From positions 1 to 64,000 of the IMG/VR virus record IMGVR_UViG_3300035070_002626: a stretch of 64,000 bases of DNA; one strand, 5' to 3'. Positions 25,748 through 63,319 of this stretch are shown here, piece after piece (the stretch's first letter is position 1; each line of letters begins with the position of its first letter). Both the position numbers and the translations under genes were made by a program. The notes beneath the pieces were generated by a model. The model worked only from the letters and a program-made list of their open reading frames with translations, ran no database searches and was not told the origin of the DNA.

Positions 25748-25789
25748 TTTTATTTCCTTGTATAGTATTACTATATTTAGTGCTGATTA

Positions 25790-27037: not shown

Positions 27038-27041
27038 ATTT

Positions 27042-27723: not shown

Positions 27724-27733
27724 ATTAAATAAA

Positions 27734-28871: not shown

Positions 28872-29037
28872 AATTAACTCCCGCTGTGCATTAATCCTAT
28901 TAGTAAAGGATAGCAGTTTTGTGTCTTGCTCAGGACACTCTGGGCACCATTTGCTCAATTGTTTTACAAGAGGAACAAAACCCTATATGTGTAAGCTAAC
29001 CGTGGGCTTATACGAGCGTATTAAGTCGCTACACTAT

Positions 29038-29121
<84 letters not shown>

Positions 29122-29193
29122 ATGTATTACATTATATACTATCTACTTATAGTGTCAATCCTGCTCGGTTAAAAAAACTCTACAATACATAAC

Positions 29194-29424
29194 TTATTCC
29201 GGAATTGTTTTATATGTTCCTTCGGTGCTACTATATGCAAGTATTAATTTTTCCCACTGCCTGTCCGACATTTCAATCACTGATACCCACACATCATCGT
29301 CATTAATGGCTTGTGTAATTAACACTGATTCCTCTCCAAAATACATTTTTACATCTTGAAACTCACCTTGTGAGTCCAGTACTGTAACAACGGTTTCGTC
29401 AAACTCTTCTTCGACTGTGAACAT
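29194..29424 (-). CDS. Hypothetical acidic protein
   Basis: ORF between tRNA genes. Confidence 0.6.
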   Translation of the reverse strand: MFTVEEEFDETVVTVLDSQGEFQDVKMYFGEESVLITQAINDDDVWVSVIEMSDRQWEKLILAYSSTEGTYKTIPE

Positions 29425-29443
29425 TTTTACTTGCGTCCTAAAT

Positions 29444-29520
29444 TGGCGATCTCTGCAGGATTCGAACCTGCGACCTAGTGCTTAGAAGGCACTTGCTCTA
29501 TCCAGCTGAGCTAAGAGACC
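29444..29520 (-). tRNA. tRNA-Arg(UCU)
   Basis: AGTGC-CTTCTAA-GCACT; canonical D and T arms; CCA. Confidence 0.95.
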
Positions 29521-29533
29521 ATGTTATAATAAT

Positions 29534-29562
29534 AGTATATGATATAGTGTTACTGTTGTCAA
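29534..29562 (-). promoter_or_regulatory. sigma70-type promoter for tRNA-Arg
   Basis: TTGACA-N17-TATACT; the -35 box overlaps the upstream TGA stop. Confidence 0.75.
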
Positions 29563-30575
29563 CCTAAATAATCGATACACCCATCAGTGTCTCTATTCAA
29601 CTCATTTGTTAGGCAGGTCATGCCTTGGTTGAAAAAATGAGAATATGTAAAATCAACAAAAATTACTTCAATTTGATACTTGTTAAACTGATCTAGTAGG
29701 TATTGATTGTTTTTGTAATGGCTGTACATCATAACAGTGTTAGTGTCAAGACTTAATGTATTAACTGCTAGAACCGTGTTAGCAAAGTCATCGTCTTGAA
29801 TTTTATCGTCTACTAAAGTCTGAGGTAGACTCAACGATTTATCATGATCGGGATTAACATGAATGATATCCCAATTTCTAAAGTATTCTGGCAAGCTTTC
29901 TTTGCTATGATAAGTGAGCAACAGCCCTGGTCTCAGTATAGACAAATGACTATCCAAATGCCCACTAAAAACATTTTTATCCAACTGATGATATCGATAG
30001 TCTGGGTACATTGCTTGTAGCCATTGGCGCCCTAGTTCATTATGGCTTCCGCACCCGCTAACAAATATGTCTTTTCCGTACCTTAAAATTGCAGCACCGT
30101 CTAATATCGGATCTTGTTCTACTACAATGTCGTCATAGTCAACTTCTATGTTTTTGTAATCATGTCTGGGCAACGGCATGTTAAGCCAACGTGCGCCGCT
30201 TTGGAGTTTTTCAATTAGCAAATCTCTCCAGTAGTAAGTTTCAAACGTTCTTTCTTTTTGCCAACTAGCTGACTCAATAATGTCGTTGCCCATAACTAAA
30301 AACACATCTCTCGGGGTTAATGGTATTTTTGTTCCCATGCTATCCCAATAAGGAGTGCAAACTTGTGTGTTGTTAATACTAACCGGGCGATGAACTTTAA
30401 TATTCCTTGATTCAAGGATTTTTTGTATCTGATTGAGTTCTTTTTTTGTTTTGTTAAAAATATGAGTAAGTCTTGGGCGTTGTGCAGCATCGCAAAAATC
30501 TATCACATTGTGATCAACATCACCTAACATTATTTCTTTAACTGTGTCAAATGTATTAAACGAGTTTATTGTCAT
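29559..30575 (-). CDS. Amidinotransferase family protein (copy 2)
   Basis: PLTPRD, LDGAA, GHLDSH, LRPG, VNTLSLD, QGMTCLT. Confidence 0.78.
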   Translation of the reverse strand: MTINSFNTFDTVKEIMLGDVDHNVIDFCDAAQRPRLTHIFNKTKKELNQIQKILESRNIKVHRPVSINNTQVCTPYWDSMGTKIPLTPRDVFLVMGNDIIESASWQKERTFETYYWRDLLIEKLQSGARWLNMPLPRHDYKNIEVDYDDIVVEQDPILDGAAILRYGKDIFVSGCGSHNELGRQWLQAMYPDYRYHQLDKNVFSGHLDSHLSILRPGLLLTYHSKESLPEYFRNWDIIHVNPDHDKSLSLPQTLVDDKIQDDDFANTVLAVNTLSLDTNTVMMYSHYKNNQYLLDQFNKYQIEVIFVDFTYSHFFNQGMTCLTNELNRDTDGCIDYLG

Positions 30576-31111
30576 CTTTTTTCCCAAGGGTTGTTTGCAT
30601 TCTCGTCAAGGAATACCCAGTCTTCTTTGCTGCTAAGTATTTTTGATATAGGTGATTCTTTGTCAAATTTACTTTTCCAATCGTATCCTGCTGCAAATTT
30701 AAAAATTATTTGACCAAACCATCCAAACGTATTTCCATTGATGCCATATATAATATCTAAATAATGTTCCTGCTCGTCTTCGGTTAACTCATTCCACCAT
30801 TCTTGGTTTAGTATAGGTCTATAATCTGCATTATAAAAATTCAACCAAGCATTGTTGATCAAAATTGAATTTATTTTTAAATATTTGTGCTGTGCTTCTA
30901 CATTTCCTGAAAATTCAAAACAGATTGTGTTTTGCTCAGACTCAACATACTCGTTGTAAAATCTTATTGTTTCGCTGTGCACCACGCCTGGCGAGTATAC
31001 TTTTTCAAACATCACTGAATCATTAATGCTTACTTTGATTAAAACATCTGTGTTCTCATGATATACTTCGATTGGTATGCTATGTGAAAAAATCAATGAT
31101 CGGTTATTCAT
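30572..31111 (-). CDS. Hypothetical beta-rich protein (paralog family)
   Basis: VSIND...LKINSILIN...FGWFG...F.F. Confidence 0.6.
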   Translation of the reverse strand: MNNRSLIFSHSIPIEVYHENTDVLIKVSINDSVMFEKVYSPGVVHSETIRFYNEYVESEQNTICFEFSGNVEAQHKYLKINSILINNAWLNFYNADYRPILNQEWWNELTEDEQEHYLDIIYGINGNTFGWFGQIIFKFAAGYDWKSKFDKESPISKILSSKEDWVFLDENANNPWEKR

Positions 31112-31136
31112 ATCGTTCTTCGTCCTGCACATGTGT

Positions 31137-31211
31137 TGGAGCGGGTGATGAGATTCGAACTCACGACAACTTCGTTGGCAACGAAGAGCTCTACCACTGA
31201 GCTACACCCGC
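31137..31211 (-). tRNA. tRNA-Gly(GCC)
   Basis: CTTCG-TTGCCAA-CGAAG; U73; CCA. Confidence 0.95.
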
Positions 31212-31223
31212 TTGTAGTATTAG

Positions 31224-31940
31224 TTATACTGTATCTACTTGTTCGGTTAAAATTCTAAAAGTGTCGTTCCAGTCAGCAACTTTGTATGATTTGCCTCTGT
31301 TTTGTTCAGCTATTGCATCTGCTAAAGGGGCGTCATTGCCGCCGGGGAAAATCGCATCACCAAAAAAATGTAGTTCGTCAGTGTCGGCAAAATCAACTAA
31401 TATCTGACTTTTGTTATTGCCTTTTGGTGCAATATCTAATCCTGTTTCCCCACCTGATGTAGCAAGTAACTCTGGAAACATTAAGTTAAATGATTTAACA
31501 ATCCTAGCACGTTCACGTTGTGCTTTATCCCATGTAACGTATAATGCACGTTCGGTTAAACTAGCGTTACGACCTACTACACTAAAGTTTACCATACCAG
31601 ATCGTTCTTCGATGTGATTGCCAGTGCGTACTGGAAATTTACTTTCGTACTCACAACTGTCTAAGAAATACCTGGCAAGATCGGGTAACCTCCAATTACT
31701 AGTACGAACATTTTTATCGCCTTGCCACACATCACTACCAGAACATTGGTAAACACGCTGACATTTGTGGTAAATGTACTCGCCAATTTGTTCGACAGTT
31801 TTAGGTTTGTCGCTCCCAGTGACAAGATACACAAGATTGTTTTCACAAAACTTGCTAAACCACACAGCAAATTGTTTGTCCATGTGCTGCCTGCTATCAG
31901 TAAGTGTACCGTCTACATCAAATATGTACTTTTTTGCCAT
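31224..31940 (-). CDS. HAD-IIB phosphomannomutase-like enzyme (PMM family)
   Basis: FDVDGTLT, VTGSD, IE.R.GMVNFS..GR, GG...DI, FFGD...GGND. Confidence 0.85.
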   Translation of the reverse strand: MAKKYIFDVDGTLTDSRQHMDKQFAVWFSKFCENNLVYLVTGSDKPKTVEQIGEYIYHKCQRVYQCSGSDVWQGDKNVRTSNWRLPDLARYFLDSCEYESKFPVRTGNHIEERSGMVNFSVVGRNASLTERALYVTWDKAQRERARIVKSFNLMFPELLATSGGETGLDIAPKGNNKSQILVDFADTDELHFFGDAIFPGGNDAPLADAIAEQNRGKSYKVADWNDTFRILTEQVDTV

Positions 31941-33444
31941 CTTCTTTCCTGATTACATAATTGTTAATTATTAATACATCAAGACCGCATTTCTTAAATG
32001 TGGCAACTGCATCCTCGGGTGTTTCTACAATAGGCTCCTGGCAGTTGAAGCTGGTGTTGAGCAACATAGGAACGCCTGTTAGGGTATAGAATGCATTTAT
32101 TAAGTCGTAGTAGCAAGAATTAAACTCGCGCTGTACAGTCTGTATACGTGCTGTGCCGTCTACATGTGTTACACCAGGAATAGTATTACTTGTAACTGGC
32201 ATGATACGGCTCATGTACGGACTAGGCTGGTTGGTATCAAAATAATCTTGATAATGTTCATACAATACACTTGGCGCAAATGGTCTGAAGTCTTCACGCA
32301 GTTTAATTTTACTGTTGATAATATCTTTAATATCTGGCTTGCGTGGATCTGCAAGTATACTCCGATTGCCTAACGCTCTGTGCCCGCTTTCGCTAGCACC
32401 CTGATACCATCCAACTATTGCACCATCGGCAATAGCAGCGGCAACTTCAGTGTATACTTCTTCCATTGATTTTTGTTGATAGTACAATCCGTTGAATATA
32501 GCAGTGTCTACAATGTAGTCTTCTCCTGCATACACTGTAGGAATATGTGTGTTACCATTTAAAATGTAATCAGCATGCATGTAAACGCCTAATGCCTGGC
32601 CTTCGTCACCAGGAGCCGGCGGCACATGTACATTTGTGTAATGCTTTGTAAACTCTTCATTCATATAACCGTTGTATGCAACTCCGCCTGCAATGCATAA
32701 ATTGTCTGATGTTTTAAGAGGATATACGTGTTTTGTAACAAGTTCAAATGTAACTTGTTGTAGCGTAAATGCTACATCCTCTTTAGCAACACGCTGTATA
32801 ATATCATGTGCACCGTCAGGGAGTCGTTGATTGGGATTTTCTAAATAACGATGAATCATTGTGTAAACTTCATCGTTATATTTTCCAAATCCTACCAAGC
32901 CCATAACCTTGCCGGCTTGGAGGAATTCAAATCCAAGATTCTGTGCTAATGTGTTCCAACACCCGCCAATTGACAGTTCCTTGGTCAAGTCAGTGATTGT
33001 ACCGTGTTTATTAATAAAGATACAATTAAAATTATAACCCTTGTCGTCAATCGCTAGTACATCACTTTCTTTAAAGCCTGAATTTAGAAATGCATAAGCA
33101 GCATGACTTTGGTGATGGTCGATATAGTAATAACTATCTGTGTGTAATCTATCCCATAGATTGTTTGGCTTAAACTTTAAAAAATCTGTGTCCGGTAAGG
33201 TCTCTTCTACTAAGTCTTCAACATATTCATGTCCTAAATTAGAAATAGTAAATGCAAATACTTGCTCTTTATTATAGTTAGGCAAGAAATGGTCGTCGAA
33301 AAAATCCCTACAGGGCACAGGGTCACGCAAGAAATCCGGATTAAGATTATGCTTTACTCTGGTGTGCCGTTCTATTTGGTTATGAACCAGACCGTTGTAT
33401 GTATTGTGATCGTGGTGATTTACTGCTATAGAAAATATTTTCAT
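31918..33444 (-). CDS. Carbamoyltransferase, NodU/CmcH family (copy 2)
   Basis: HHQSHA, AGKVMGL, GGVAYN, RALGNRSILADP, REDFRPFAP, HVDGTAR, LNTSFN. Confidence 0.9.
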   Translation of the reverse strand: MKIFSIAVNHHDHNTYNGLVHNQIERHTRVKHNLNPDFLRDPVPCRDFFDDHFLPNYNKEQVFAFTISNLGHEYVEDLVEETLPDTDFLKFKPNNLWDRLHTDSYYYIDHHQSHAAYAFLNSGFKESDVLAIDDKGYNFNCIFINKHGTITDLTKELSIGGCWNTLAQNLGFEFLQAGKVMGLVGFGKYNDEVYTMIHRYLENPNQRLPDGAHDIIQRVAKEDVAFTLQQVTFELVTKHVYPLKTSDNLCIAGGVAYNGYMNEEFTKHYTNVHVPPAPGDEGQALGVYMHADYILNGNTHIPTVYAGEDYIVDTAIFNGLYYQQKSMEEVYTEVAAAIADGAIVGWYQGASESGHRALGNRSILADPRKPDIKDIINSKIKLREDFRPFAPSVLYEHYQDYFDTNQPSPYMSRIMPVTSNTIPGVTHVDGTARIQTVQREFNSCYYDLINAFYTLTGVPMLLNTSFNCQEPIVETPEDAVATFKKCGLDVLIINNYVIRKEDGKKVHI

Positions 33445-33487
33445 CAGACTCTCTGTTTTGTTAAACATATAATAACACTGATAGTTG

Positions 33488-34081
33488 CTATACGTCAACC
33501 ATTCTTTTTAAATCGTGAATAGTAAAATCACTATCTTTGGCGATAGTCACTATTTCGCCCATTCGTTCAAACACTTCTTCGCCATCTGCGGTCTCTGTTT
33601 GATTAACATGTGCCTGAGCTTCATCTAACCAAAACGTGGTAAAATAATCAATATCGCTATTGTCTGTAAAATTAAACTTGTATATACCATTGAATCCAAA
33701 ATAAAGGTTGTTAATAATGAACTCAGGCGGGGTTTCATTTTTTTCGTGGTAGTCACTAACAATATTCTCAGGCCAGTTAACATAAAACGGCATTGTGTGC
33801 AGCACTGTGTGCAGTATTGAATTATTATCTATTGTTATATCTAGTAGTTCAACGCTTAAATCAGCTACAATATTATTACTATCGTCAACAATGGTATCGT
33901 CGTTGGTTTTGTTATAGTGTTCAATGGACAATACATTTTGCAACAATGGTTGAATGTTTAACGTGTGTTCATTAATCTCAGAAATTTCAGTATCAACATA
34001 TACTGTATCGTTAACAGATAGTCTCACCTTAGGTGATTTTCCATTGGCACAGTTGCCACGGAGCTTAATCTTTATTTCCAT
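33488..34081 (-). CDS. Hypothetical beta-rich protein (paralog family)
   Basis: SPKVRLSVND...HYNKT..DT...VEL.DITID...LYFGFNG.Y.F.F. Confidence 0.6.
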   Translation of the reverse strand: MEIKIKLRGNCANGKSPKVRLSVNDTVYVDTEISEINEHTLNIQPLLQNVLSIEHYNKTNDDTIVDDSNNIVADLSVELLDITIDNNSILHTVLHTMPFYVNWPENIVSDYHEKNETPPEFIINNLYFGFNGIYKFNFTDNSDIDYFTTFWLDEAQAHVNQTETADGEEVFERMGEIVTIAKDSDFTIHDLKRMVDV

Positions 34082-34099
34082 TATGTGCTAGCCTGTTTT

Positions 34100-35653
34100 T
34101 TAAAAATTTTGCTTTGAATGTGCCCATGGTTCAATGATATCAGCTGATAAACTGTTCTGTTCTCGATCAAACTTTACATTGTTAATCATAGTTCCAGTAT
34201 TATCTGTTAGTAGCTGAACTTCGTTCCAGCTACTCAGCAATTGCTTTGTATAGTTTGCTGCTTCGAAAACTGGATACCCCAATTCTTCAACATGTGATTG
34301 TAGGATAATCCTTCTCTTCAATCGTTCCTTGTATGTTAATGTCGGATTATCAACACAAACCCAATCATTAACATGATCATTGTCCTGCACTAGGTTATAT
34401 TTTTCTCTATCATCATATAATGGAGTGCGTTTTAATAGATTCAGTGTAAGTCCTAAATTTACTTCTTCGATTGTGCCGTTATCTAGATATGGCTTGTATC
34501 GAGTAAACATCTCTTTTGTTAAATCAAAATCTTCTATGGTCTCTGTAGGATACCCTACAATCATTAACATACGTACTTTGATCCCTACTCTATCTAGTTG
34601 GGAAATGCTGTAGTTAAGATCTTCTTCGCTATATCCCTTTTTCATGTGTTCTCTCACTGCCGGAGAACCGCTTTCGATTCCAACTAACATTGTACCTGCA
34701 CCAGCTGCCTTCATGACATCAAAGTCTTCGGGTGGCATCTGTTTTGGCCCACGTACAATAAAATGGGTGTCCCATATAAACTTTTTTTCTTCTGGTAGTG
34801 TTTTTCTGTATTCAGCTAACTCTAGAGTCATTTCCCTAAATGCTTTCATACTACCATTAATTAGACTATCTGTAAATCTAAATGCAGTTGCACCATATGC
34901 TTCAACTTGTTGACGCATTTCGTCAGCAATATTTTTGCCACTGCGATAGTAAAACTTTGGCCACATACTTGCAACATCACAAAATGTGCATTTTCTTACA
35001 CATCCTCTACTGCCAGTAATCGGCAATGCTTCCAACCCTTTGGAATTAGTGTAGGTTTTTAGTTCGTAGTCGTCATAATTGGGAAAAGCTAAACTATCAA
35101 CATCTACGATTTGCTGAGGAGGCTTGCCATTAATTCCAGGATAATCAATGTTTCCTTTAAGTAACTCGACTAATGCAAGTTCTCCTTCGCCCCGTATATA
35201 TGCGTCAATGATACGATTTTCGTGCAGAGACTCTGCAAATTTAAAATCTGTAGCAATTCCGCCGCCTCCGATTACAATTTTAATAGCAGGGTTGAGCTTT
35301 TTAATTGCAACAGATAGTAAGCGAGTTGCTCGTTGACTATTATAACTAAACACACTCATACCAACCCATGTTGGATTTTGATTAACAATTTTTTCGGCCC
35401 ACGATTCGATAACAGGAGCTAATAATTTCCATGTTTTATTATTATAGAATGTGTGATAAAAAAAGAAGTTGTCAATGGCGTTATGTAGTTCGTGATTATG
35501 AAACTGCTGATCAATTTCGGCATTAAGGTCAAAGATAATACTACTAAATCCGTGTGCAGATAAACTTCCCTTTAGCAATGCTGCTCCTGCTGGAGTATAC
35601 CCAAAATCGTCAACGATTCTCGGCGGTATTACTAACACAATATCTTTATTCAT
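34100..35653 (-). CDS. B12-binding radical SAM enzyme (class B methylase-like)
   Basis: N-terminal cobalamin-binding fold (GMSVF, IVIGG, GEGE); SRGCVRKCTFC; GIESGS; IVGYPTET. Confidence 0.88.
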   Translation of the reverse strand: MNKDIVLVIPPRIVDDFGYTPAGAALLKGSLSAHGFSSIIFDLNAEIDQQFHNHELHNAIDNFFFYHTFYNNKTWKLLAPVIESWAEKIVNQNPTWVGMSVFSYNSQRATRLLSVAIKKLNPAIKIVIGGGGIATDFKFAESLHENRIIDAYIRGEGELALVELLKGNIDYPGINGKPPQQIVDVDSLAFPNYDDYELKTYTNSKGLEALPITGSRGCVRKCTFCDVASMWPKFYYRSGKNIADEMRQQVEAYGATAFRFTDSLINGSMKAFREMTLELAEYRKTLPEEKKFIWDTHFIVRGPKQMPPEDFDVMKAAGAGTMLVGIESGSPAVREHMKKGYSEEDLNYSISQLDRVGIKVRMLMIVGYPTETIEDFDLTKEMFTRYKPYLDNGTIEEVNLGLTLNLLKRTPLYDDREKYNLVQDNDHVNDWVCVDNPTLTYKERLKRRIILQSHVEELGYPVFEAANYTKQLLSSWNEVQLLTDNTGTMINNVKFDREQNSLSADIIEPWAHSKQNF

Positions 35654-35687
35654 ATTTCTATTTACCGCTAATCGCATATTTGTGTTA

Positions 35688-35763
35688 TGGTGCCCCAAGA
35701 GAGACTCGAACTCCCGACCTACTGATTACAAATCAGTTGCTCTACCAGCTGAGCTATTGGGGC
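35688..35763 (-). tRNA. tRNA-Thr(UGU)
   Basis: ACTGA-TTTGTAA-TCAGT; CCA. Confidence 0.95.
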
Positions 35764-55493: not shown

Positions 55494-56461
55494 TTATTTT
55501 CTCCGGTGTGTTGTATTAAGTGTTTAATTTTGCCCAGGCTTTGCCCGCCTTTGATGCTAGTTCTAATTCCTGGTTTTTGTATTTCTAACCAACTTACGTT
55601 CTTCTTCATATCAAAGCTTGCTACTACATTAAATCCATATCGGGTACACGCTGCTTTTACCAAGTGGCCCGGAGTATAAGTGTAATACGAATTTCTAAAA
55701 TTGTCAATACCAATTGGATAATCACAATTATTATAGGTAAAAATGGCTGTACCTCCTGGCTGTAAAACAGAAAAAATATCGGATAGATACTGTTCAATGA
55801 GCCTCAGAGGGCGAAAATTAAAGTAATCAATTGCAACAACTAACCCAATTTGCCCAGTTGGTAAGTCATGTAACACACTATCTTTTGTTTCATCGACAGT
55901 GTAGTATCGTACTCGGCGCTGATAATCAGTCTTCCATAATTTTTTAACTTCCTTAAACATATCTTGATGATCATCAACTAGGTACAACGGATCACAACTT
56001 ACTAGATGATCAGTTACATCACCTAGTCTAGGGCCGAGTTGCAATGCAGAATGTTTCCAGTTAACATGCTTTGTAATTCGTCCTACAAGAAAATCTCGAA
56101 TTTCGGGATCACCTAGTAGATTTTTAAATCTATCTCGATCAAGTTTATAGTCAGCATCGTCCCTTAACCCTTCTTGGTAAATCTCTTCACTTTTCTCATT
56201 CAAACACGGACCTTCTATTTCACCGAGCTCTTGGCCTAGACACACCCTAAACTTAGAAATATCCTGGTATACTGCGTCTAATTCTCTAATTATATTTTTA
56301 TGTCGGTCCAGTATATTGCTCTTAAGATTATTAACATCAATATCGTATGTATTTAGATCGTTGTTAAACTTCTGCAATAATTTTTCAATTGCTTGCCTTG
56401 ATTCCGTTAAATCTAACTCGTCTAACAGATGTTTATAGTTAACAAGGTTGACTAAATCCAT
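55490..56461 (-). CDS. Coiled-coil + degenerate methyltransferase-domain protein
   Basis: LQLGP..G, ...L.PGG.AIFTYN. Confidence 0.55.
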   Translation of the reverse strand: MDLVNLVNYKHLLDELDLTESRQAIEKLLQKFNNDLNTYDIDVNNLKSNILDRHKNIIRELDAVYQDISKFRVCLGQELGEIEGPCLNEKSEEIYQEGLRDDADYKLDRDRFKNLLGDPEIRDFLVGRITKHVNWKHSALQLGPRLGDVTDHLVSCDPLYLVDDHQDMFKEVKKLWKTDYQRRVRYYTVDETKDSVLHDLPTGQIGLVVAIDYFNFRPLRLIEQYLSDIFSVLQPGGTAIFTYNNCDYPIGIDNFRNSYYTYTPGHLVKAACTRYGFNVVASFDMKKNVSWLEIQKPGIRTSIKGGQSLGKIKHLIQHTGENK

Positions 56462-59121
56462 TATTCAAACTCAAATAAACTGTTAAATGTGTTGCTAGTG
56501 TCGGTGTCTTGCTTTAGATTCCAATCTAGCACACTAAGCAAATTATCAATTTTCTTATCAACAACAGCCGCTTCCATTTCAGCATCGTCAAACGGCAGCT
56601 CTTTGAACCAAGATGGGATGTGCAGCTCATCTGTTGGATACCCAATGCTAGTCCAATTAAGCGGATTTGCCTTTAGCTTACAAACAATAGTTTTCATACC
56701 GTCGATGATACTTTGTGAATAGTTGTCGCCATTCATTTTTTTCATCTGGTTCCAGTTCATTGCTGCTCTAACATGCCCGGGCATGTTTGCACGACCTAAA
56801 CGTTTTTCTTCTGCTGCGTACTTGGTTAAATTGTTAACACGTTTGGGCGCACCCTTTTCCCATGCAGGGCGTTCTTTAAAGTCATACTTAAAGCTCTTGA
56901 TCATCTCAACAATTTCAGTGCGCTCAGCACCCCCGAGTACGCTGGTTAACAATGTTAGCAAGAACTTTTGAATTACAACTGGCGTGTCGCTGCGTTTCAA
57001 GTCTAATCCCATTGCTTTGATTTTGCCTTGTTTGCCTTCTACATCAAGTCGCTTGCCTTCGTCATCATAGATGTTGATTGCATAACGTTTCTTTGTAATA
57101 AACAATCCACGATCAGCAACACTCTCACGACCGCCTTTGATAATTGCACCATTTTCTCGTGGCACATGAAATGCTTGTTCCATAAATCCTGGCCAGCTTT
57201 CATTTAGCTGATCACTAATAGCATCATAGAGCTGGATACAAGTTTCTTTGTTCCATTCCATTCTGCCGTCTTCGACGTCTTTCTTGATCACTGGCCAGGC
57301 GCTAAAGTATACACTGTCAGTATCACCATAGATAACACTTTGTCCAGTGTGATCGTATTTGCCTGTGATACATTCGTTTACAAAACTGTCCATATGATGT
57401 GCAATAGCCCTACCAGTTAGTGTAGTGCTTTGTCCAATACGTTTGTCAAAGAATCGACATCCAGGATTGAGAATAGCACCATACAAACTATTTAGATTAA
57501 TCTTCTTCACCAGCTGACGTTTATCTAAAAATTCACGCTCCTCGGGATCAGTTGATGCACGAAGTTTTGCTTGAATCTCCTGGCGTTCTCTATACCAACG
57601 TGCTAACAGCCCGGGCACAACGCCTTCTTTTTCATATGAAAAGATAGTACCGTTTGCACTTAATATCCAAGGTTGATTGCTGTCAAATATGATCTTCCAA
57701 ATCTCGGCTGCACTGTGCACACTTTCTTCGCCATTCTCCCAGTCGATTGTAATCTCGCTGCCGATCTCTTTGTTCATAACCGAAGTGTATTCCAACGATC
57801 CGAACAGTCCTTCCCATGCCATAGCAAAACTGCTTTTTTTGTCAATTTTGTTTTGGATATAGCGTTCAGTCATAGTTGGACGCAACTGCCCAATGATTGT
57901 TTCATTGCCCATGTTTAGTGCACGAATAGCACTAGGATACAAACTATTAATGTCAATGGCACCAATCCATTCGTGTATACCCTTCTTAGGATAAGCAACA
58001 TATGCACCTGCTGCCGCAGTATCCTCACTTGAGTCTCGTTCACGACGATTGGGAACAACCAAGCCTTGCTCGTGCGCTTCGTTGATAATTGCTTGCTCAG
58101 TAACAGCAACCGCACCCATTGTAGTTTGTAGTAGCACTGTGTTTGCGTGTGCTAGTTCGTTTGCAAGTGCAAGAAAGCGTAGTTTCTTATCCAACTTGTC
58201 CAACAGCAATGTATCCTGCCTGTTGTATTCGATAAAAGTTTTAAAGTTTTGGTTGTACAAGTGATCCAGTGTGCCTTCGTATGCAGTTTTACGTTCACCT
58301 AGCTCGTGTTCACCAATTGCATCCAAACTGTAGCTGTGACGCTCTTCGTATGTGTACTTTCGATACAATTGCATATAGTCCATGTGTACTCTGCCAATGA
58401 GATCAAACGTAACATTCTCTGCACCAAACCGTTCAAACATGCGTTTCTTAGGAAGTTGTCCCCACAAACAAAAACGTCTTGTGTCATCCTTGCTGAGTAT
58501 GCGATTTACTCGATTGACAGTGTACGGAATATCATAACCTTCGCTGTTCCATCCACTAAGCACATCTGCATCTTCAATAAGATCAAGAAACACCTTCAGC
58601 ATTTCTTCTTCTCGTTCAAACAACATAGTGTTTTCAAACTCGTTGCATATTTCCTGTGCGGTTTCCCAGCTCATGCCTTTTGGTGGAATAACCAGCGTAA
58701 CTAGTTGTTCCATCCATTGTAAGTACACAGAGATAGCAGTAATTGCATTAAACGGATCATTTGTTGGACTATAACCACGCTCTGGGTCAAAGTCAACTTC
58801 GATATCGAAAAATGCAGCTTGCAGTGTAGGCGCAGCTTGATCTTTGTAGTTCTCTTCAAAACAGCGAAACACTGGATTGATATCACTTTCAAAGATGTTT
58901 TTACCCGAATGCATGCGTAGTTCCTTGCGGAACTCTTTGTTGTTACGGGTACCTACTCTACTCACAGGACTGCCGTAAATGCTTTTGTGTTTACCTCGTG
59001 GATCCTCATAATAGAACACATAGTTAGCCGGATACTCTTTGTATATCCGTTGTCCCTCTACACGTTCTACCACATGAATGCGATCTTTTTCTCTGTCAAA
59101 CAGAGCGTCAACATAACTCAT
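56461..59121 (-). CDS. Family B DNA polymerase
   Basis: FDIE (ExoI), GWNSEGYD, YN.QD, DINSLYPS, K..LNSLYG, YGDTDS, KKRY. Confidence 0.97.
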   Translation of the reverse strand: MSYVDALFDREKDRIHVVERVEGQRIYKEYPANYVFYYEDPRGKHKSIYGSPVSRVGTRNNKEFRKELRMHSGKNIFESDINPVFRCFEENYKDQAAPTLQAAFFDIEVDFDPERGYSPTNDPFNAITAISVYLQWMEQLVTLVIPPKGMSWETAQEICNEFENTMLFEREEEMLKVFLDLIEDADVLSGWNSEGYDIPYTVNRVNRILSKDDTRRFCLWGQLPKKRMFERFGAENVTFDLIGRVHMDYMQLYRKYTYEERHSYSLDAIGEHELGERKTAYEGTLDHLYNQNFKTFIEYNRQDTLLLDKLDKKLRFLALANELAHANTVLLQTTMGAVAVTEQAIINEAHEQGLVVPNRRERDSSEDTAAAGAYVAYPKKGIHEWIGAIDINSLYPSAIRALNMGNETIIGQLRPTMTERYIQNKIDKKSSFAMAWEGLFGSLEYTSVMNKEIGSEITIDWENGEESVHSAAEIWKIIFDSNQPWILSANGTIFSYEKEGVVPGLLARWYRERQEIQAKLRASTDPEEREFLDKRQLVKKINLNSLYGAILNPGCRFFDKRIGQSTTLTGRAIAHHMDSFVNECITGKYDHTGQSVIYGDTDSVYFSAWPVIKKDVEDGRMEWNKETCIQLYDAISDQLNESWPGFMEQAFHVPRENGAIIKGGRESVADRGLFITKKRYAINIYDDEGKRLDVEGKQGKIKAMGLDLKRSDTPVVIQKFLLTLLTSVLGGAERTEIVEMIKSFKYDFKERPAWEKGAPKRVNNLTKYAAEEKRLGRANMPGHVRAAMNWNQMKKMNGDNYSQSIIDGMKTIVCKLKANPLNWTSIGYPTDELHIPSWFKELPFDDAEMEAAVVDKKIDNLLSVLDWNLKQDTDTSNTFNSLFEFE

Positions 59122-59148: not shown

Positions 59149-59400
59149 TTAAAGTGTGCGGCCTGCTGTTGTTAGGATTTCTTCAAGAAGTTCTTGATCT
59201 TCTTTTTCAGCAGCATAGCTGGCTTTGTGTGCAATGCGAATTGCTTTTTTCAAGACACTGGGCTTGATTTGCAGTTCCTCACCAATGGCTTTGATTGTGT
59301 CTGACAGTCCTGCATTGAGTGCTTCGACTTCACTCATAACTTGCATGCCTTCATTGATAATCTGTGTTAGTTTAGTTTTAGAATTGCTGTCAAAATTCAT
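59149..59400 (-). CDS. Small dsDNA-binding protein (T4 DsbA/GapR-like)
   Basis: Helical 83 aa protein; ..I..E....P..L.K.I...HK pattern; upstream of PolB. Confidence 0.45.
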   Translation of the reverse strand: MNFDSNSKTKLTQIINEGMQVMSEVEALNAGLSDTIKAIGEELQIKPSVLKKAIRIAHKASYAAEKEDQELLEEILTTAGRTL

Positions 59401-59426: not shown

Positions 59427-59455
59427 ATTGTAGTACAGTTGTTGCAGATTGTCAA
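59427..59455 (-). promoter_or_regulatory. sigma70-type promoter for the replication operon
   Basis: TTGACA-N17-TACAAT. Confidence 0.75.
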
Positions 59456-59460: not shown

Positions 59461-59578
59461 TAGTTTGCCTACTCGTAAATTAGATTATGGCACTTCAAAC
59501 ATTAAGGGTAGCGATATCTTAAATGTTCAGGGCAGGTCCCGCCAGCAGCCATTAGACATCGGTCCTAAGGCTACACAA
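59461..59578 (-). ncRNA. Candidate structured ncRNA
   Basis: GC-enriched intergenic stretch downstream of TATAAGTA; three hairpins and a possible pseudoknot. Confidence 0.45.
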
Positions 59579-59611: not shown

Positions 59612-60340
59612 TTAGTTAAGTTCCACACCAGTCATGTCTGCGGCCATGTCGCCCATTGCAAGACTAATTCTTCCATTGCGATTGTATAGAAAGAACTTCC
59701 CGTTTCCTTCATCAGGGCGCATTGTAATTTTACCAACCTTGGCTTTGCCAACAATGTTCTTAGCAACAACAGTAAATGTACGCTTGTTGTCTTTGCTAAT
59801 AGCTGAGTCATAACTAATTGTAAGTTTGTCGCCACGGTTAACACTATCCCACATGTCTTGTGACATAGCGCCTTCGTTGACGCCTTTCTTGTTAGCAAAG
59901 TCTTTCTTGGCAGATTTTGCTAAAGACTTGGCAAGATTTTTAGTCTTAATAATATTGCCAAATTGGTCTTTCTTTTCGCCTTTGTAATCTTGCCATCCAG
60001 AGTCGTACTCTACATCGCCTTCTGCTTCGCTAACGCCCTCTTTTTCCAGCATTTTCTTGCCGTAGTCCATCATCTTCATGATACTAGTACGACTAACGCC
60101 CGTTCTCTTTTCTAGTTCTTGAATGCTGCTAGCACCAAATGATGCACCGTAAGAAGTTAGTTCATTGCCCACTCGGCTAAGTGCAGTTGATAATGCATCG
60201 TCCTTGGTTGTTGCCGCTTTATCCATTAGCTTGCGACCAATGTTTGCAAGCTTTCTTTGTGCCGGGTTAATTTCAAACTTAGCCGGGATATCTGATTCAG
60301 AGACTGGTGTATTATCTTCAAATAAATCTAAAAAACGCAT
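59612..60340 (-). CDS. Hypothetical protein, possible internal head protein
   Basis: N-terminal MRFLDLFE; modules separated by VSE/VNE. Confidence 0.6.
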   Translation of the reverse strand: MRFLDLFEDNTPVSESDIPAKFEINPAQRKLANIGRKLMDKAATTKDDALSTALSRVGNELTSYGASFGASSIQELEKRTGVSRTSIMKMMDYGKKMLEKEGVSEAEGDVEYDSGWQDYKGEKKDQFGNIIKTKNLAKSLAKSAKKDFANKKGVNEGAMSQDMWDSVNRGDKLTISYDSAISKDNKRTFTVVAKNIVGKAKVGKITMRPDEGNGKFFLYNRNGRISLAMGDMAADMTGVELN

Positions 60341-60342: not shown

Positions 60343-61443
60343 TTATTCATCCATATAATCTAAATTGTGTGGCGTAGTCTTTTGTATAAAGGACTCGCAT
60401 GCTTGTACGGCATCCGCAAGTTTACCGAATGAACTTTTAGATTCTTTTCCGTTAATCTTTACTCTATATCCGTCATCTTCGTTGCCGAAGATTTTGAGTG
60501 ATTTACCGTTAGCAGCTTTATAGCTCTTAACTGGTTCTTTGATTACTTCTTGTACTGCACTTGTGTCAACATCTCTAAGGTAGTCCATAATACTACGCTT
60601 TTTGCTAACTTGATCTTCTTTGGTCATTTTTGATAATTGTGTAGGATCAACTGACCCCTCAGGGGCAACTGGGCCTTTATATCCACTGTTGCCTCCCCCG
60701 GCAACTTGGCTAGTACCCGGGCTTACACCGTCCCATGACTCTTCGTCGCCTGGGTTGGAACCTTCTTTCATATCACTGTAATCGTTATCCAATGCTTGAA
60801 AATCATCATAGCTAATGTACATATCAGTGTCCGGATCGTAGTACATGCCTTCTTTTGGATCGTAATAAACAACTTTGCCACTCAGTGTAGTGAATGGACC
60901 TTCAAGTCCTTTACGTGCTTGATACTTGTCATCCATTGGAGGCATAACTTTATAGCCTTCGTCCAATTCGTTTTTCATGTAATCACGAGCTGTGTCAAGA
61001 TAGTCGAGTGCTTTGGTAATCTTTGCTTGTACCCATTCAGGCAAGTTGTCACCATCGGACAAGATACTTTCGAGCTCTAGTGCAGCATCCGCAGCTCTAT
61101 TAAGATCGCCTTTGGCCATATCGCCTTCTTGATCGTATTCACCTACATCTTCAGGATCGATATTTTCGCCAACAAAGTAATCGCCATAAACATTCTTTTC
61201 TTCGTCGCTGCCCAGTACTGGACTTTGATTTGGCATGTCGTACTCTGCTGGTAGAGCTTTGGCACTTTCAAAAGGTGTCTCACGATACATATTCTCAAGG
61301 ATTGCACTCATGTCGTTTGCTGCCAAACCTTCTTCAAGATGATGTGGCTTAGACGAAGAAACACTTTCTCCGCTTTCTAGCTGATTCATCTTGGCGACTA
61401 GGTCTGCAAAACTTGAAACTTCTTTTGGGTCTACATTACTCAT
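60343..61443 (-). CDS. Hypothetical acidic modular protein, possible internal head protein
   Basis: LEE/VGE/LDE/MKE boundaries; LPEWVQAKIT and YYDPKEG.YYD modules. Confidence 0.6.
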   Translation of the reverse strand: MSNVDPKEVSSFADLVAKMNQLESGESVSSSKPHHLEEGLAANDMSAILENMYRETPFESAKALPAEYDMPNQSPVLGSDEEKNVYGDYFVGENIDPEDVGEYDQEGDMAKGDLNRAADAALELESILSDGDNLPEWVQAKITKALDYLDTARDYMKNELDEGYKVMPPMDDKYQARKGLEGPFTTLSGKVVYYDPKEGMYYDPDTDMYISYDDFQALDNDYSDMKEGSNPGDEESWDGVSPGTSQVAGGGNSGYKGPVAPEGSVDPTQLSKMTKEDQVSKKRSIMDYLRDVDTSAVQEVIKEPVKSYKAANGKSLKIFGNEDDGYRVKINGKESKSSFGKLADAVQACESFIQKTTPHNLDYMDE

Positions 61444-61886
61444 TATGCTCTACTTCCTTTGAGAAAACTGCGTAACATCCATCCGTGTTTGTTATGTGCA
61501 TCTAGCCTTTCAGCAATAAAGTTAGCAATGCCTTCGTTGTTTTCATCCACGGCTGATTTGAAAGTTTGTGTTAGTATTTGCAACATTGCATTGTTGTCGT
61601 CGGCTAATTCTTGTATCATTAGCATAGCCCGTGGAATTTTTGTCTGGCCACTGATAACACTAAGCTCTCCAAATCTTTCAAATGATCCCGGAGTGTATAC
61701 GTCGAGGGTTCTAATATATTCAGCTGTCTGATCAATTGTGTTTTCGTACACTTCGCTGTACAAGTCTCCAAAGAACTGATGGTACTGTGCAAAGTCTGGA
61801 CCTTCAACATTCCAGTGAAAGTTCTGTGCTTTAATTACAAATGCGTATTCTGTTGCCAATAGCGTTTTTAGATCATCTGCTAACAT
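61443..61886 (-). CDS. dps: Dps/ferritin-like DNA protection protein
   Basis: K..NFHWNVEG..F...H..F..LY...D..AE..R; H.K..WML. Confidence 0.92.
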   Translation of the reverse strand: MLADDLKTLLATEYAFVIKAQNFHWNVEGPDFAQYHQFFGDLYSEVYENTIDQTAEYIRTLDVYTPGSFERFGELSVISGQTKIPRAMLMIQELADDNNAMLQILTQTFKSAVDENNEGIANFIAERLDAHNKHGWMLRSFLKGSRA

Positions 61887-61945
61887 TATGTTTCCTGTTT
61901 GGTTATTATAAGAGTATTTATCTTGTGCTTGTATTTATTAAATGA

Positions 61946-62110
61946 TTATCCAAAAAGTGCTATTAACAATACAATAAGTATGAACCATCCTGTTATCCCA
62001 ATGCCATTGTTGCCGACAAGCCCTTTGCGTTTAGCACAGTTATAACAGTATCTATACTTTGAATTAGTTCGATTACTGCAAAAAAACGCAGCACAAGTTT
62101 TTTGACTCAT
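61946..62110 (-). CDS. 54-aa Cys4 zinc-finger + C-terminal transmembrane microprotein
   Basis: MSQKTCAAFFCSNRTNSKYRYCYNCAKRKG...GWFILIVLLIALFG; AGGAG RBS. Confidence 0.65.
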   Translation of the reverse strand: MSQKTCAAFFCSNRTNSKYRYCYNCAKRKGLVGNNGIGITGWFILIVLLIALFG

Positions 62111-62124
62111 TAAAAACTCCTATT

Positions 62125-63159
62125 TTATAATCCGGCAAACCATGTATCAGAAAAGTCTCTAACTTTAGCAAGTTCGATTTGTGCTGGTTCGTATTCAGGG
62201 TGCACAGGACTAAACACATGATGGAAGTTGTATTCCTCAAGCGACCAAGAGCCCCACATTTGCAATTTAGAATATTCCACTATGTCTACATCAAATTCCT
62301 TGCAAAAATAGTAAAATGGTTCTATTTCTTGATAATTTTGCTGTTGTAAAATCATCCTGGTATGTAATTTAAAACCTAATTCATGTTTCTTGTTTTGTAA
62401 AAAATGCATTGCTTGTAGTAACTTTGGCCATTTCCCACCGCGGCGTATTTTTTCGTATGTGTCGGCTTGTGATGCATCAATACTTACAGTTATTTTGTTA
62501 ATGTTATTAACTTTGTTTCCGAATCGATGCCAGTTTTGTTCGCACAGCAACCCATTTGTACCAAAGTCAAATTCTACATTGGGAAATTTATCAATATCAA
62601 TTGAGTTTACAAAATCCATTAACATAGGACTAGCAAACACTTCACCTGCCCCGCCAAGTTCTATTTTTATTTTTTTATCTGTTGCGTCAGCAAACAAGTT
62701 GTTAGAAAGAGTTTCGCCTAGCTTGCGCTGTTCTTCTTGTTTTGATAATGGAGTTTTTATAATATGACGTCGGCAGCTAGGACAACTTAGATTACAAGTT
62801 TGGTCCCCATTGAAACTAATATGATGAGGCATTTCAAATTTTGATGGATCGTCGAATAGTTCTCTTATGTTCGGCGGCACTGACTTGATCTTGTTTAGCC
62901 CGTTGTTAGCAATTACAGCACACCAATCTGCATCACAATAAACATAAGATCCATCAATGATACTTTGTCTAATTTTTTGTGCCAGTTCAGACGACAACAA
63001 TTCCTTTAGTGTGTTTTCTTTTAAATTTCCAATGGTAGTTGGCATCCATCGGTTACATCCACACATTCGAACATCGCCCTCTAGGGTAACCTCGATCATA
63101 ACAAATGGTGACAAACAGTACTTCCCTTGGTACTGTTTAGCCGGAAACATTTCAATCAT
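62125..63159 (-). CDS. Radical SAM protein with N-terminal SPASM-like domain
   Basis: YCLSPF..G.V..C, IGN; CNLSCPSCR; GE.FAS; TNG; SIDA...YEKIR.GG.W. Confidence 0.85.
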   Translation of the reverse strand: MIEMFPAKQYQGKYCLSPFVMIEVTLEGDVRMCGCNRWMPTTIGNLKENTLKELLSSELAQKIRQSIIDGSYVYCDADWCAVIANNGLNKIKSVPPNIRELFDDPSKFEMPHHISFNGDQTCNLSCPSCRRHIIKTPLSKQEEQRKLGETLSNNLFADATDKKIKIELGGAGEVFASPMLMDFVNSIDIDKFPNVEFDFGTNGLLCEQNWHRFGNKVNNINKITVSIDASQADTYEKIRRGGKWPKLLQAMHFLQNKKHELGFKLHTRMILQQQNYQEIEPFYYFCKEFDVDIVEYSKLQMWGSWSLEEYNFHHVFSPVHPEYEPAQIELAKVRDFSDTWFAGL

Positions 63160-63319
63160 ACTTAACAGCCCGTACTGTGTTGGCATATTTTCGTTTAATC
63201 TTTTTCACAGTGGGCTTGCTGCGAGAAATAACTGAACCTAATGGTGCCGAAACTGTGGCAATACTACCACTTGCTGTTCCGCCTGTACTTACATCTTCTA
63301 GTAACTCTCGAATCTTCAT
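63152..63319 (-). CDS. 55-aa protein MKIRELLE... (possible internal head protein)
   Basis: Translated by hand; ATGA coupling with the upstream gene. Confidence 0.6.
   Translation of the reverse strand: MKIRELLEDVSTGGTASGSIATVSAPLGSVISRSKPTVKKIKRKYANTVRAVKYD

What the first reader, a model, noticed from the sequence alone, without database searches (positions are those of the whole stretch)
59461..59578. Ribozyme/riboswitch-like RNA upstream of the replication operon
Seen (minus strand), after TATAAGTA: GUAGCC-UUAGGAC-CGAU-GUCUAA-U-GGCU, GGCGG-GAC-CUGCC, and AACAUUUAAG-AUAUCGCUACC-CUUAAUGUU. Loop GCUAC is complementary to the 5' GUAGC, and distal AGUGCC to GGC(U)GCU, allowing a pseudoknot or alternative folds. 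It lies upstream of the early promoter of the PolB operon, so it is probably a separate late transcript. It does not match any class I can recognise.
Basis: partly seen in the sequence, partly recalled or inferred. Interest (0 to 1): 0.65.

Follow-up and report, generated by a model that had tools for sequence, protein, structure and literature searches.

The report
Phage pseudoknot RNA complementary to 23S rRNA

Summary
On its own the window sequence does not fold better than shuffles, but the same element occurs in at least 85 distinct sequences from related viral contigs. Their helices differ in sequence while the structure is kept: P1, P2, P3 and a pseudoknot between the P2 loop and the 3' tail.

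The window copy is 59575-59488 on the minus strand (46.5 bits, E 1e-10). It is the only copy in the 300-kb genome. Rfam 15 has no match.

The real pseudoknot partner is the P2 loop.

Main result: the invariant P3 loop (U)UCGCUACC and P1 loop UUAGGACCG(U), read in that order, are a perfect antisense of 23S rRNA nt about 1919-1937. This is the helix 69 3' strand plus helix 70, and also the I-CeuI homing site.

Flanking genes are heterogeneous, so a metabolite riboswitch is unlikely. No ribozyme signature was found.

Best reading: a new phage RNA that binds host 23S rRNA. What that binding does is unknown. Other phage contigs hold 17-25-nt contiguous copies of the same 23S segment far more often than control rRNA segments. 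They occur in both orientations, so a DNA-level reading is not excluded for those copies.

The parts
59482..59575 (-). Whole element as matched by covariance model R1. The conserved part is about 59575-59488.
   Evidence: 46.5 bits, E 1.2e-10, and the only hit in the 299,910-bp genome.
59569..59574 (-). P1 5' strand, GUAGCC
   Evidence: Pairs with 59550-59545. A P1 stem is present in most homologues with different sequences, and some carry an optional inner hairpin.
59560..59568 (-). Invariant start of the P1 loop, UUAGGACCG. Together with the preceding CC (59570-59569) it is an 11-nt antisense of 23S rRNA C1920-G1930.
   Evidence: Invariant columns in A1, A2 and A5. The consensus forms a perfect 12-bp duplex at 23S 1919-1930, -21.8 kcal/mol, the best site in the E. 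coli rrn operon.
59545..59550 (-). P1 3' strand, GGCUGC
59541..59543 (-). P2 5' strand, GGC
   Evidence: P2 is 99.7% paired across 85 sequences with GC/CG/AU/UA exchanges.
59534..59540 (-). P2 loop, GGGACCU. This is the 5' strand of the pseudoknot.
   Evidence: Loop/tail covariation over 17 loop types, 0 of 2000 permutations. The window's own pseudoknot pairing is the weakest type (G-C, then C-G, C-G).
59531..59533 (-). P2 3' strand, GCC
59518..59527 (-). P3 5' strand, AACAUUUAAG
59507..59517 (-). P3 loop, AUAUCGCUACC. UCGCUACC (59514-59507) is antisense to 23S rRNA G1929-A1936.
   Evidence: CGCUACC is near-invariant. The consensus forms a 9-bp duplex at 23S 1929-1937.
59498..59506 (-). P3 3' strand, CUUAAUGUU
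59492..59497 (-). Conserved A-rich joiner. The window has UGAAGU; the family consensus is AAAGU.
   Evidence: Invariant or near-invariant A, A, G columns.
59488..59491 (-). Pseudoknot 3' strand, GCC(A)
59427..59455 (-). Context only: sigma-70-type promoter TTGACA-17-TACAAT for the 83-aa gene and PolB. It lies downstream of the element.
   Evidence: 11 of 12 matches. Equivalent promoters follow the element in 22 of 81 loci by a simple pattern.
59612..60340 (-). Context only: upstream 242-aa ORF with no family. Its stop codon is 37 nt before P1.
59149..59400 (-). Context only: downstream 83-aa gene (phrog_12534/phrog_639), followed by T4-type PolB at 56461-59121.

Best explanation
**What it is (shown).** The element is a member of a new family of about 80-105-nt structured RNAs of uncultured aquatic jumbo myophages. 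It is transcribed on the gene strand, usually directly behind an ORF. The fold has four parts:
- P1, a stem whose loop begins with the invariant UUAGGACCG.
- P2, a short hairpin.
- P3, a hairpin with the invariant loop (U)UCGCUACC.
- A pseudoknot: after P3 and an A-rich AAAGU joiner, the 3' tail pairs with the P2 loop. This gives an H-type pseudoknot with P3 embedded in its long loop.

**How it likely works (inferred).** The pseudoknot scaffold holds P1 and P3 side by side. The P3 loop followed by the P1 loop then presents one continuous 17-20-nt antisense surface to 23S rRNA nt about 1919-1937 (3' strand of helix 69, then helix 70, in domain IV at the subunit interface). The loops nucleate kissing contacts with this segment when it is single-stranded, most plausibly in nascent or unassembled 23S rRNA or in rRNA fragments.

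**Consequence (speculative).** Options are blocking domain IV folding and 50S maturation, marking rRNA for a double-strand nuclease, masking the site from a nuclease or modifier, or sensing free rRNA.
For: **A structured family**
- 86 covariance-model hits, 85 distinct, at E 1e-21 to 2e-6.
- P2 is 99.7% paired with compensatory changes. Whole-structure covariation exceeds all 500 shuffles and all slid controls.
- The pseudoknot is supported by 17 loop types matched to their own tails, 0 of 2000 permutations.
- P3 forms with many different helices.

**Copy number and database status**
- One copy in this genome and 1-2 copies in five other 137-353-kb records.
- No Rfam match, including at E up to 10.

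**Complementarity to 23S rRNA**
- The loop strings co-occur in published oligonucleotides that are antisense to 23S C1914-C1961 and to the I-CeuI site.
- In E. coli 23S, CGGUCCUAAGGUAGCGAA starts at 1920. The P1 loop consensus has its best rrn site at 1919-1930, and the P3 loop site at 1929-1937 is directly adjacent.
- Chance that two independent loops concatenate into a 20-mer found in the rRNAs is about 1e-8 (my estimate).
- Predicted hybridisation gain is -15 to -18 kcal/mol, against -3 to -4 for shuffled targets.
- The two loop variants that occur as transitions keep wobble pairs: A to G opposite U1926, and C to U opposite G1935.

**Independent scaffold**
A second architecture (variant 2, 9 examples) has a different scaffold but keeps both loops. 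There the P3-equivalent hairpin is an intrinsic terminator with a U-run on this strand.

**Target conservation and specificity**
- The segment is nearly universal in bacteria. Only 1.1% of 5,525 bacterial 23S sequences carry mismatches that could abolish I-CeuI cutting of its 26-bp site (PMC2790883).
- The same sequence was seen in 23S rDNA of Acidobacteriota, Gammaproteobacteria and Cytophagales.
- This 23S segment is specifically over-represented in viral contigs: 40 of 91 14-mer hits extend to 17-25 nt. Controls give 5 of 62 (sarcin-ricin loop) and 6 of 120 (16S 530 loop).
- Eight of 27 such families have a terminator just downstream on the antisense-bearing strand, against 2 on the other strand.
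Against: - No experiment shows binding.
- In mature ribosomes nt 1919-1937 are base-paired and partly buried, and rRNA is in vast molar excess.
- The strand test by G-U versus A-C pairs is decisive only for P2 (16 G-U, 0 A-C). It is inconclusive for P1 and P3.
- The window's own copy has only 11 + 8 complementary nt, and part of its P1 loop can pair internally.
- Short P1 loops (11 nt) cannot form the full duplex without opening P1.
- The P3 loop alone has an equally good 9-bp site in 16S.
- Contiguous copies of the same 23S segment also occur in the sense orientation inside phage tRNA arrays. They are centred on the I-CeuI cleavage site, so a DNA-level meaning of this sequence in phages cannot be excluded.
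- Metatranscriptome contigs cover the region but define no RNA ends.
Confidence: 0.45

Rival explanations
1. A cis-acting riboswitch-like aptamer. The conserved loops and the pseudoknot would form a ligand pocket, and ligand binding would stabilise the pseudoknot to control read-through or translation of the following gene.
For: - About 25 highly conserved nucleotides sit in loops and joiners, and the H-type pseudoknot has an A-rich strand and an embedded hairpin, as in SAM-II/V or preQ1-II.
- In about 45% of loci an ORF starts 3-30 nt after the tail.
- Downstream genes include S-adenosylhomocysteine hydrolase (4 loci), radical-SAM proteins and a fatty-acid desaturase.
- Some copies have a U-run right after the pseudoknot strand.
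Against: - Downstream and upstream genes belong to many unrelated families, mostly of unknown function.
- In the window and in 31 of 78 loci the next gene is the 83-89-aa gene, which in most of them, as in the window, lies behind its own strong promoter.
- The element abuts upstream stop codons.
- There is no Rfam riboswitch hit.
- This reading leaves the exact 23S complementarity of both loops as an about 1e-8 coincidence.
Confidence: 0.12
2. A 3'-end element of the upstream mRNA. It would act as a terminator, processing site or exonuclease block that insulates the upstream unit from the replication operon. The rRNA complementarity would be incidental or secondary.
For: - In 60 of 79 loci the element starts within 15 nt of, or overlaps, the upstream stop codon.
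- Variant 2 ends in a canonical terminator.
- U-rich tracts follow the pseudoknot in several subtypes.
- The element sits just before promoters.
- There are one or two copies per genome, in a variable region upstream of the replication module.
Against: - No terminator-like site is present in the window copy.
- Generic terminators are not single-copy and do not need 20 invariant loop nucleotides.
- This reading does not explain why two scaffolds keep the same two loops.
Confidence: 0.15
3. A DNA-level or single-stranded-DNA element related to the I-CeuI-type homing or recombination site of 23S rDNA. It would be a folded recombination or nuclease site rather than a functional RNA.
For: - The two loops split the rDNA site exactly at A1928|G1929, next to the I-CeuI cut.
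- Contiguous 17-25-bp copies of the site, of LAGLIDADG-site length and centred on the cut, occur in other phage contigs in both orientations, including tRNA arrays.
- G-U asymmetry is weak for P1 and P3.
Against: - Covariation in three helices plus a loop-tail pseudoknot implies a folded single strand.
- P2 has 16 G-U and 0 A-C pairs.
- Terminator hairpins with U-runs lie on this strand in variant 2.
- The pseudoknot loop lengths (1 nt across the deep groove, a long loop across the shallow groove) fit only this strand (my inference).
- The half-sites are permuted, and no endonuclease or recombinase gene is consistently adjacent.
Confidence: 0.1
4. A self-cleaving ribozyme of a new class.
For: It is compact, pseudoknotted and conserved. 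It is phage-borne and intergenic, like many twister, hammerhead and pistol copies.
Against: - No hit to any Rfam ribozyme family.
- The conserved nucleotides are accounted for by the rRNA complementarity.
- Metatranscriptome contigs run through the element in one run; breaks in others coincide with a strain indel.
Confidence: 0.04

Closest known systems
c4 antisense RNA of phages P1/P7 (Rfam RF01695); my own knowledge
   Same: A phage-encoded, structured, trans-acting antisense RNA. It presents two short recognition segments in loops that pair with two neighbouring target segments in the same 5'-to-3' order.
   Different: The c4 target is the phage's own ant/icd mRNA, not rRNA. It has no pseudoknot scaffold and no sequence or covariance-model similarity (no Rfam hit).
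Box C/D and H/ACA guide RNAs (sno/sRNAs) of eukaryotes and archaea
   Same: A structured scaffold carrying short antisense segments against universally conserved rRNA, acting on immature rRNA.
   Different: None is known in bacteria or phages. Box C/D and H/ACA elements were not looked for. The guide topology is permuted (5' loop pairs with the 5' target half) and the partner proteins are unknown.
H-type pseudoknot riboswitches (SAM-II/SAM-V, preQ1-II)
   Same: A short stem whose loop pairs with a downstream strand preceded by an A-rich tract. preQ1-II also has a hairpin embedded in the long loop.
   Different: No covariance-model match. There is no consistent regulated gene family. The most conserved nucleotides lie in the P1 and P3 loops, outside the pseudoknot.
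Group II intron EBS1/EBS2-IBS pairing, and the I-CeuI / LSU intron homing site at 23S ~1917-1931
   Same: The same rRNA/rDNA site is a known hotspot for mobile introns and homing endonucleases. Two guide segments in separate loops pair with contiguous target segments in the same order, as EBS2/EBS1 do.
   Different: The element is only about 90 nt. It has no intron core and no hit to the Rfam intron models. No endonuclease or reverse-transcriptase gene is associated. The guide segments are 8-11 nt rather than about 6.
TURBS and Shine-Dalgarno type mRNA-rRNA complementarity
   Same: An element between a stop codon and the next start that is complementary to rRNA.
   Different: Those pair with accessible small-subunit rRNA. 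Here the target is a large-subunit segment that is paired in mature ribosomes, and the window copy has no adjacent downstream ORF.

Membership tests
Any Rfam 15 family (riboswitches, ribozymes, sRNAs, c4, group I/II introns, tRNA-like) | Covariance-model score at or above the family's gathering threshold | tested here: not met
   No hit at the element in the window at gathering thresholds. Only noise at E up to 10. No hit in 15 related loci covering all subtypes.
tRNA / tmRNA-like | Cloverleaf or tRNA-like domain detectable by ARAGORN | tested here: not met
   ARAGORN finds 7 tRNAs elsewhere in the window and none at 59.5 kb.
Intrinsic terminator | G+C-rich hairpin immediately followed by a U-run | tested here: not met
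   None on the minus strand at the element. The feature is met in the variant-2 architecture of other phages.
Metabolite riboswitch (generic) | Consistent position in the 5' UTR of a functionally coherent set of genes | tested here: not met
   Flanking genes are heterogeneous. A promoter intervenes in the window and in many other loci.
Metabolite riboswitch (generic) | Ligand-dependent structural change | not testable with these tools
   Needs in-line probing, SHAPE or ITC.
Trans-acting antisense RNA | Extended Watson-Crick complementarity to a defined target, presented in accessible loops | tested here: met
   11-12 nt (P1 loop) plus 8-9 nt (P3 loop) pair with adjacent 23S segments 1919-1937.
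Trans-acting antisense RNA | Discrete transcript and demonstrated pairing with the target in vivo | not testable with these tools
   Only assembled metatranscriptome contigs were available. They cover the region but show no ends or chimeras.
Self-cleaving ribozyme | Site-specific self-scission | not testable with these tools
   No known class matched. An in vitro assay is needed.

The most novel reading that the evidence does not exclude
Jumbo phages, and other phages with simpler designs, encode dedicated RNAs aimed at one universally conserved 23S rRNA segment (helix 69 3' strand and helix 70, nt about 1915-1937). The pseudoknotted element in this window would be a scaffolded bipartite guide that pairs with host large-subunit rRNA. 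Its role could be to block, mark, mask or sense ribosome assembly or rRNA damage. That would be the first snoRNA-like or anti-ribosomal guide RNA in the bacterial and phage world. It would belong to a broader, unnoticed phage interest in this rRNA site, with antisense copies behind stop codons and sense copies in tRNA arrays.
Probability: 0.35. Interest if true: 0.95.

Novelty: categorically new. Interest (0 to 1): 0.85.

Why it matters
No bacterial or phage RNA is known to act by base-pairing with large-subunit rRNA. Guide RNAs for rRNA are regarded as a trait of eukaryotes and archaea.

A single-copy, strongly conserved phage RNA aimed at helix 69/70 would open a new mode of host takeover or counter-defence at the ribosome. 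Helix 69 forms intersubunit bridge B2a and takes part in release-factor and recycling function.

It would also give a universal, host-independent antisense design against a site already known as an antibiotic, PNA and homing target.

Even if the rRNA link proved incidental, the element is a well-supported new structured RNA family with a covarying pseudoknot, ready for Rfam and for biochemical testing.

Tried and rejected
- **Rfam.** Scans at gathering and at E up to 10 gave nothing, in the window and in 15 related loci.
- **DNA search of cultured phages.** No match with the window region.
- **Cultured relatives.** The nearest by PolB are Sinorhizobium phage Phosso (52% identity), Agrobacterium phage Atu_ph07 (46%), and Vibrio phage 2.275.O and GAP32-like phages (43%). 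None has the element. One 16.5-bit hit in the Vibrio phage lies inside an ORF.
- **Bacterial genomes.** The pattern scan gave chance hits and true 23S rDNA, plus one variant-2 copy in a Paludibacter MAG contig.
GCUAC/GUAGC and tail/GGCUGCU were rejected because they are not conserved.
- **Late promoter.** ATAAATA is enriched 17-28 nt upstream of ORFs in this genome. TATAAGTA is rare and is not conserved upstream of the element elsewhere.
- **Strand test.** Sense versus antisense folding energy and G-U counts were inconclusive for P1 and P3.
- **Flanking proteins.** PHROG and Pfam scans found no common family.
- **16S 530 loop.** The commonest P2 hairpin, CGGCUGCUG (53 of 85), is antisense to 16S 519-527. 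It is absent from the window copy, it covaries with the tail, and anti-530 segments are not enriched in viral contigs. I treat it as chance.
- **Partner in the phage genome.** No contiguous 23S-like sense site was found in the window's genome.
- **Metatranscriptomes.** Logan contigs cover the region. Breaks at 59497-59499 coincide with a strain indel, so they say nothing about RNA ends.
- **Literature.** No phage RNA complementary to 23S rRNA was found. A 2023 catalogue of more than 10,000 candidate viral structured RNAs (PMC10690425) may list the element anonymously. Its text does not mention it, and its supplements are not held.

Full report
**Setting.** The window is the first 64 kb of a 299,910-bp IMG/VR record, linear and 86% complete. 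It is a jumbo myophage. It has a T4-type PolB, seven tRNAs and a two-piece alpha-type tmRNA. The nearest cultured relatives by PolB are Sinorhizobium phage Phosso (52%) and Agrobacterium phage Atu_ph07 (46%).

The finding lies in a 211-nt gap on the minus strand. Upstream is a 242-aa ORF (59612-60340). Downstream is an 83-aa gene (59149-59400, phrog_12534/phrog_639), directly followed by PolB. A near-perfect sigma-70 promoter (TTGACA-17-TACAAT, 59455-59427) lies downstream of the element.

**Checking the observation.** The three hairpins are present as written. The sequence alone does not fold better than shuffles: z = -0.8 and -1.6.

I fetched loci encoding relatives of the two flanking proteins and read the upstream regions. 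About 40 distinct sequences shared the same core while their helices differed. A pattern scan of viral contigs added more.

A covariance model (R1) built from 80 sequences (A2) finds 86 matches, 85 of them distinct, at E 1e-21 to 2e-6. The window copy (59482-59575, minus strand) scores 46.5 bits, E 1e-10. It is the only copy in its genome. Five other 137-353-kb records have one or two copies each.

**Structure.**
- P2 is paired in 99.7% of cells, with GC, CG, AU and UA exchanges.
- The whole structure beats 500 of 500 shuffles on paired cells, compensatory cells, further pair types and covariation score, and beats every slid control.
- The covariance-model alignment misregisters P1 and P3 (66% and 59% paired). 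Folding each sequence with the conserved loops kept open gives a P3 hairpin in nearly all sequences and a P1 stem in most. Helix sequences differ widely, and some P1 stems hold an inserted hairpin.
- The seven-nucleotide P2 loop pairs with the tail that follows a conserved AAAGU. Seventeen loop types (GGCUGCU, GGGAACU, GCCCACU, GGCCCCG, GCCUCCG, GGGUACCG and others) each match their own tail. Mean duplex energy is -7.1, against -3.5 +/- 0.6 kcal/mol after swapping tails, 0 of 2000 permutations.

The fold is therefore P1, then an H-type pseudoknot (P2 plus PK) with P3 embedded in its long loop.

**What the conserved loops are.** A full-text search for the invariant loop strings returned papers in which both occur within a single oligonucleotide. 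One is the reverse primer for the I-CeuI site of 23S rDNA (GGGTCGCTACCTTAGGACCGTTATAGTTAAA; PMC2790883). The other is a 48-mer complementary to 23S C1914-C1961 (PMC3241648).

In an annotated E. coli 23S gene, CGGUCCUAAGGUAGCGAA starts at position 1920. The pairings are:
- P1 loop UUAGGACCG(U) pairs with 1919-1928, extendable over G1929-G1930 by the preceding CC.
- P3 loop (U)UCGCUACC pairs with 1929-1937.

Read P3 loop then P1 loop, the two loops form an uninterrupted antisense of 17-20 nt. I estimate the chance of this at about 1e-8.

The P1 site is the best in the whole rrn operon (-21.8 kcal/mol). The P3 loop alone is not unique, because an equal 9-bp site exists in 16S. Its adjacency to the P1 site is what counts. 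Cofolding predicts -15 to -18 kcal/mol, against -3 to -4 for shuffled targets.

The target is the 3' strand of helix 69 plus helix 70. It is almost invariant in bacteria, and identical sequence was seen in rDNA of three phyla. The window copy itself carries 11 + 8 complementary nucleotides (23S 1920-1936).

**A second scaffold.** Nine sequences from other contigs form variant 2 (L103, L116, L136, L142, L154, L155, L190, L191 and L240). They lack P2 and the pseudoknot but keep both loops:
- a 4-5-bp stem, ACGG/CCGU, around NUUAGGA;
- a terminator hairpin whose loop is AAGUGUCGCUACC, followed by a U-run.

This indicates that the gene strand is the functional RNA strand and that the loops are the conserved business end.

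Other strand evidence is weaker. P2 has 16 G-U and no A-C pairs. P1 and P3 show no clear asymmetry. The pseudoknot's loop lengths fit this strand only (inference).

**Context.**
- In 25 of 79 loci the UAG inside CCUUAGG is the stop codon of the upstream ORF. In 35 more the stop lies 3-15 nt upstream.
- Downstream, 31 of 78 loci have the 83-89-aa gene. In most of them, as in the window, a sigma-70-type promoter precedes it. This holds for 13 of about 45 loci found by pattern alone.
- Other downstream genes include a family of about 360 aa (12 loci), S-adenosylhomocysteine hydrolase (4), a fatty-acid desaturase and radical-SAM proteins.
- Some protein families occur on either side of the element.

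The element therefore behaves as an independent module in the variable region ahead of the replication genes. It does not look like the leader of a particular gene.

Metatranscriptome assemblies from marine and salt-marsh samples contain the region. One contig spans the upstream gene, the element and the promoter. Contigs cannot show RNA ends, and DNA carry-over cannot be excluded.

**The same rRNA segment elsewhere in phages.** The 18-mer TTCGCTACCTTAGGACCG occurs in 8 viral contigs, 3 of them rDNA-like.

The 14-mer GGTCCTAAGGTAGC hits 91 contigs. Contiguous identity to 23S reaches 17-25 nt in 40 of them. Control 14-mers decay geometrically: 5 of 62 for the sarcin-ricin loop and 6 of 120 for the 16S 530 loop reach 17 nt or more. 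The long matches are mostly intergenic (26 of 40), whereas the short chance matches lie inside ORFs (44 of 49).

Two classes appear:
- Antisense copies on the gene strand, 5-16 nt after a stop codon and followed by a terminator. Examples are the L351/L363/L393, L408/L424 and L357/L437 families and L432. Eight of 27 families have the terminator on that strand, against 2 on the other.
- Sense copies on the tRNA strand inside large phage tRNA arrays (L428, L435, L418, L386, L397 and L362).

The first class supports an antisense-RNA reading. The second class, together with the fact that these segments are centred on the I-CeuI cut and have the length of a LAGLIDADG site, keeps a DNA-level or decoy reading open. 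The window's genome has no sense copy.

**Interpretation.** Three things are shown:
- a new, widespread, low-copy structured RNA family with a covarying pseudoknot;
- two invariant loops that jointly match the antisense of 23S 1919-1937;
- independent scaffolds that keep these loops.

I infer that the element binds 23S rRNA. The most likely targets are nascent or unassembled molecules, or fragments, because the segment is paired in mature ribosomes.

The consequence is speculative. Candidates are interference with domain IV folding and bridge B2a formation, creation of a duplex for a double-strand RNase, masking of the site from a nuclease or modifier, or sensing of free rRNA.

The rivals are weighed in their own sections: a metabolite riboswitch, a 3'-end element, a DNA-level site and a ribozyme.

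**Novelty.** There is no Rfam family, and no paper on a phage RNA complementary to 23S rRNA was found. The element may sit unnamed in a 2023 catalogue of viral candidate structured RNAs. I rate the family, and the proposed rRNA targeting, as outside known kinds. The function itself is untested.

Noticed in passing
window 24238-24573 (-): A two-piece (permuted), alphaproteobacterial-type tmRNA gene in this phage (Rfam RF01849 101 bits, RF04321 105 bits). It hints at an alphaproteobacterial host.
   Followed up: no
window 20863-35763 (-): Seven tRNA genes: Glu-UUC, Ser-ACU, Asn-GUU, Leu-UAG, Arg-UCU, Gly-GCC and Thr-UGU. The Ser anticodon ACU is unusual.
   Followed up: no
L428, L435, L418, L386, L397, L362 (viral contigs with large tRNA arrays): 17-21-nt copies of 23S 1917-1937 in the sense orientation on the tRNA strand, about 40 nt after a tRNA gene. 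They are flanked by conserved GGGAUUACA and repeated UAGCGA. Their nature (rRNA decoy, homing site or intron-like RNA) is unknown.
   Followed up: partly
L351/L363/L393, L408/L424, L357/L437, L432, L352/L353 (viral contigs): Simple designs: a stop codon, then 5-16 nt, then a contiguous 17-21-nt antisense of 23S (about 1920-1940), then a terminator hairpin with a U-run. In L352/L353 the antisense sits in a 14-nt hairpin loop.
   Followed up: partly
L348:10204-10248, L350:3436-3476; Paenibacillus phage Pd_22F 83122-83169 (L621): Longer 41-48-nt pieces matching 23S 1914-1960 in viral or phage records without a full rRNA gene. The Pd_22F piece lies near a serine recombinase gene and could be an attachment-site or host-flank remnant.
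   Followed up: no
A5 alignment, P2 hairpin (not in the window copy): The commonest P2 hairpin, CGGCUGCUG (53 of 85 sequences), is antisense to 16S rRNA 519-527 (530 loop). It is probably chance: it covaries with the tail, and anti-530 segments are not enriched in viral contigs.
   Followed up: yes
L220:1501-1576 (second copy in a 353-kb record): A copy that keeps P2, the pseudoknot and the P3 loop (GGUCGCUACC) but has lost the UUAGGACCG loop of P1.
   Followed up: no
L067:1577, L072:2847, L073:2847: In one subtype the element is followed by a conserved 23-codon hydrophobic mini-ORF (MGKL(S/A)IASVLIY..W) before the promoter of the 86-aa gene.
   Followed up: no
window 61443-63186 (-) and related loci: Auxiliary genes cluster around the element. 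The window has a radical-SAM/SPASM protein and a ferritin/Dps-like protein. Relatives have S-adenosylhomocysteine hydrolase, a fatty-acid desaturase and a TctC-like protein.
   Followed up: partly
whole genome (G000), minus strand: ATAAATA occurs 39 times, 20 of them within 40 nt upstream of an ORF start (mostly 17-28 nt). This is consistent with a T4-like late-promoter box. In several relatives an ATAAATA or ATAAGTA box sits between the element and the next ATG.
   Followed up: partly
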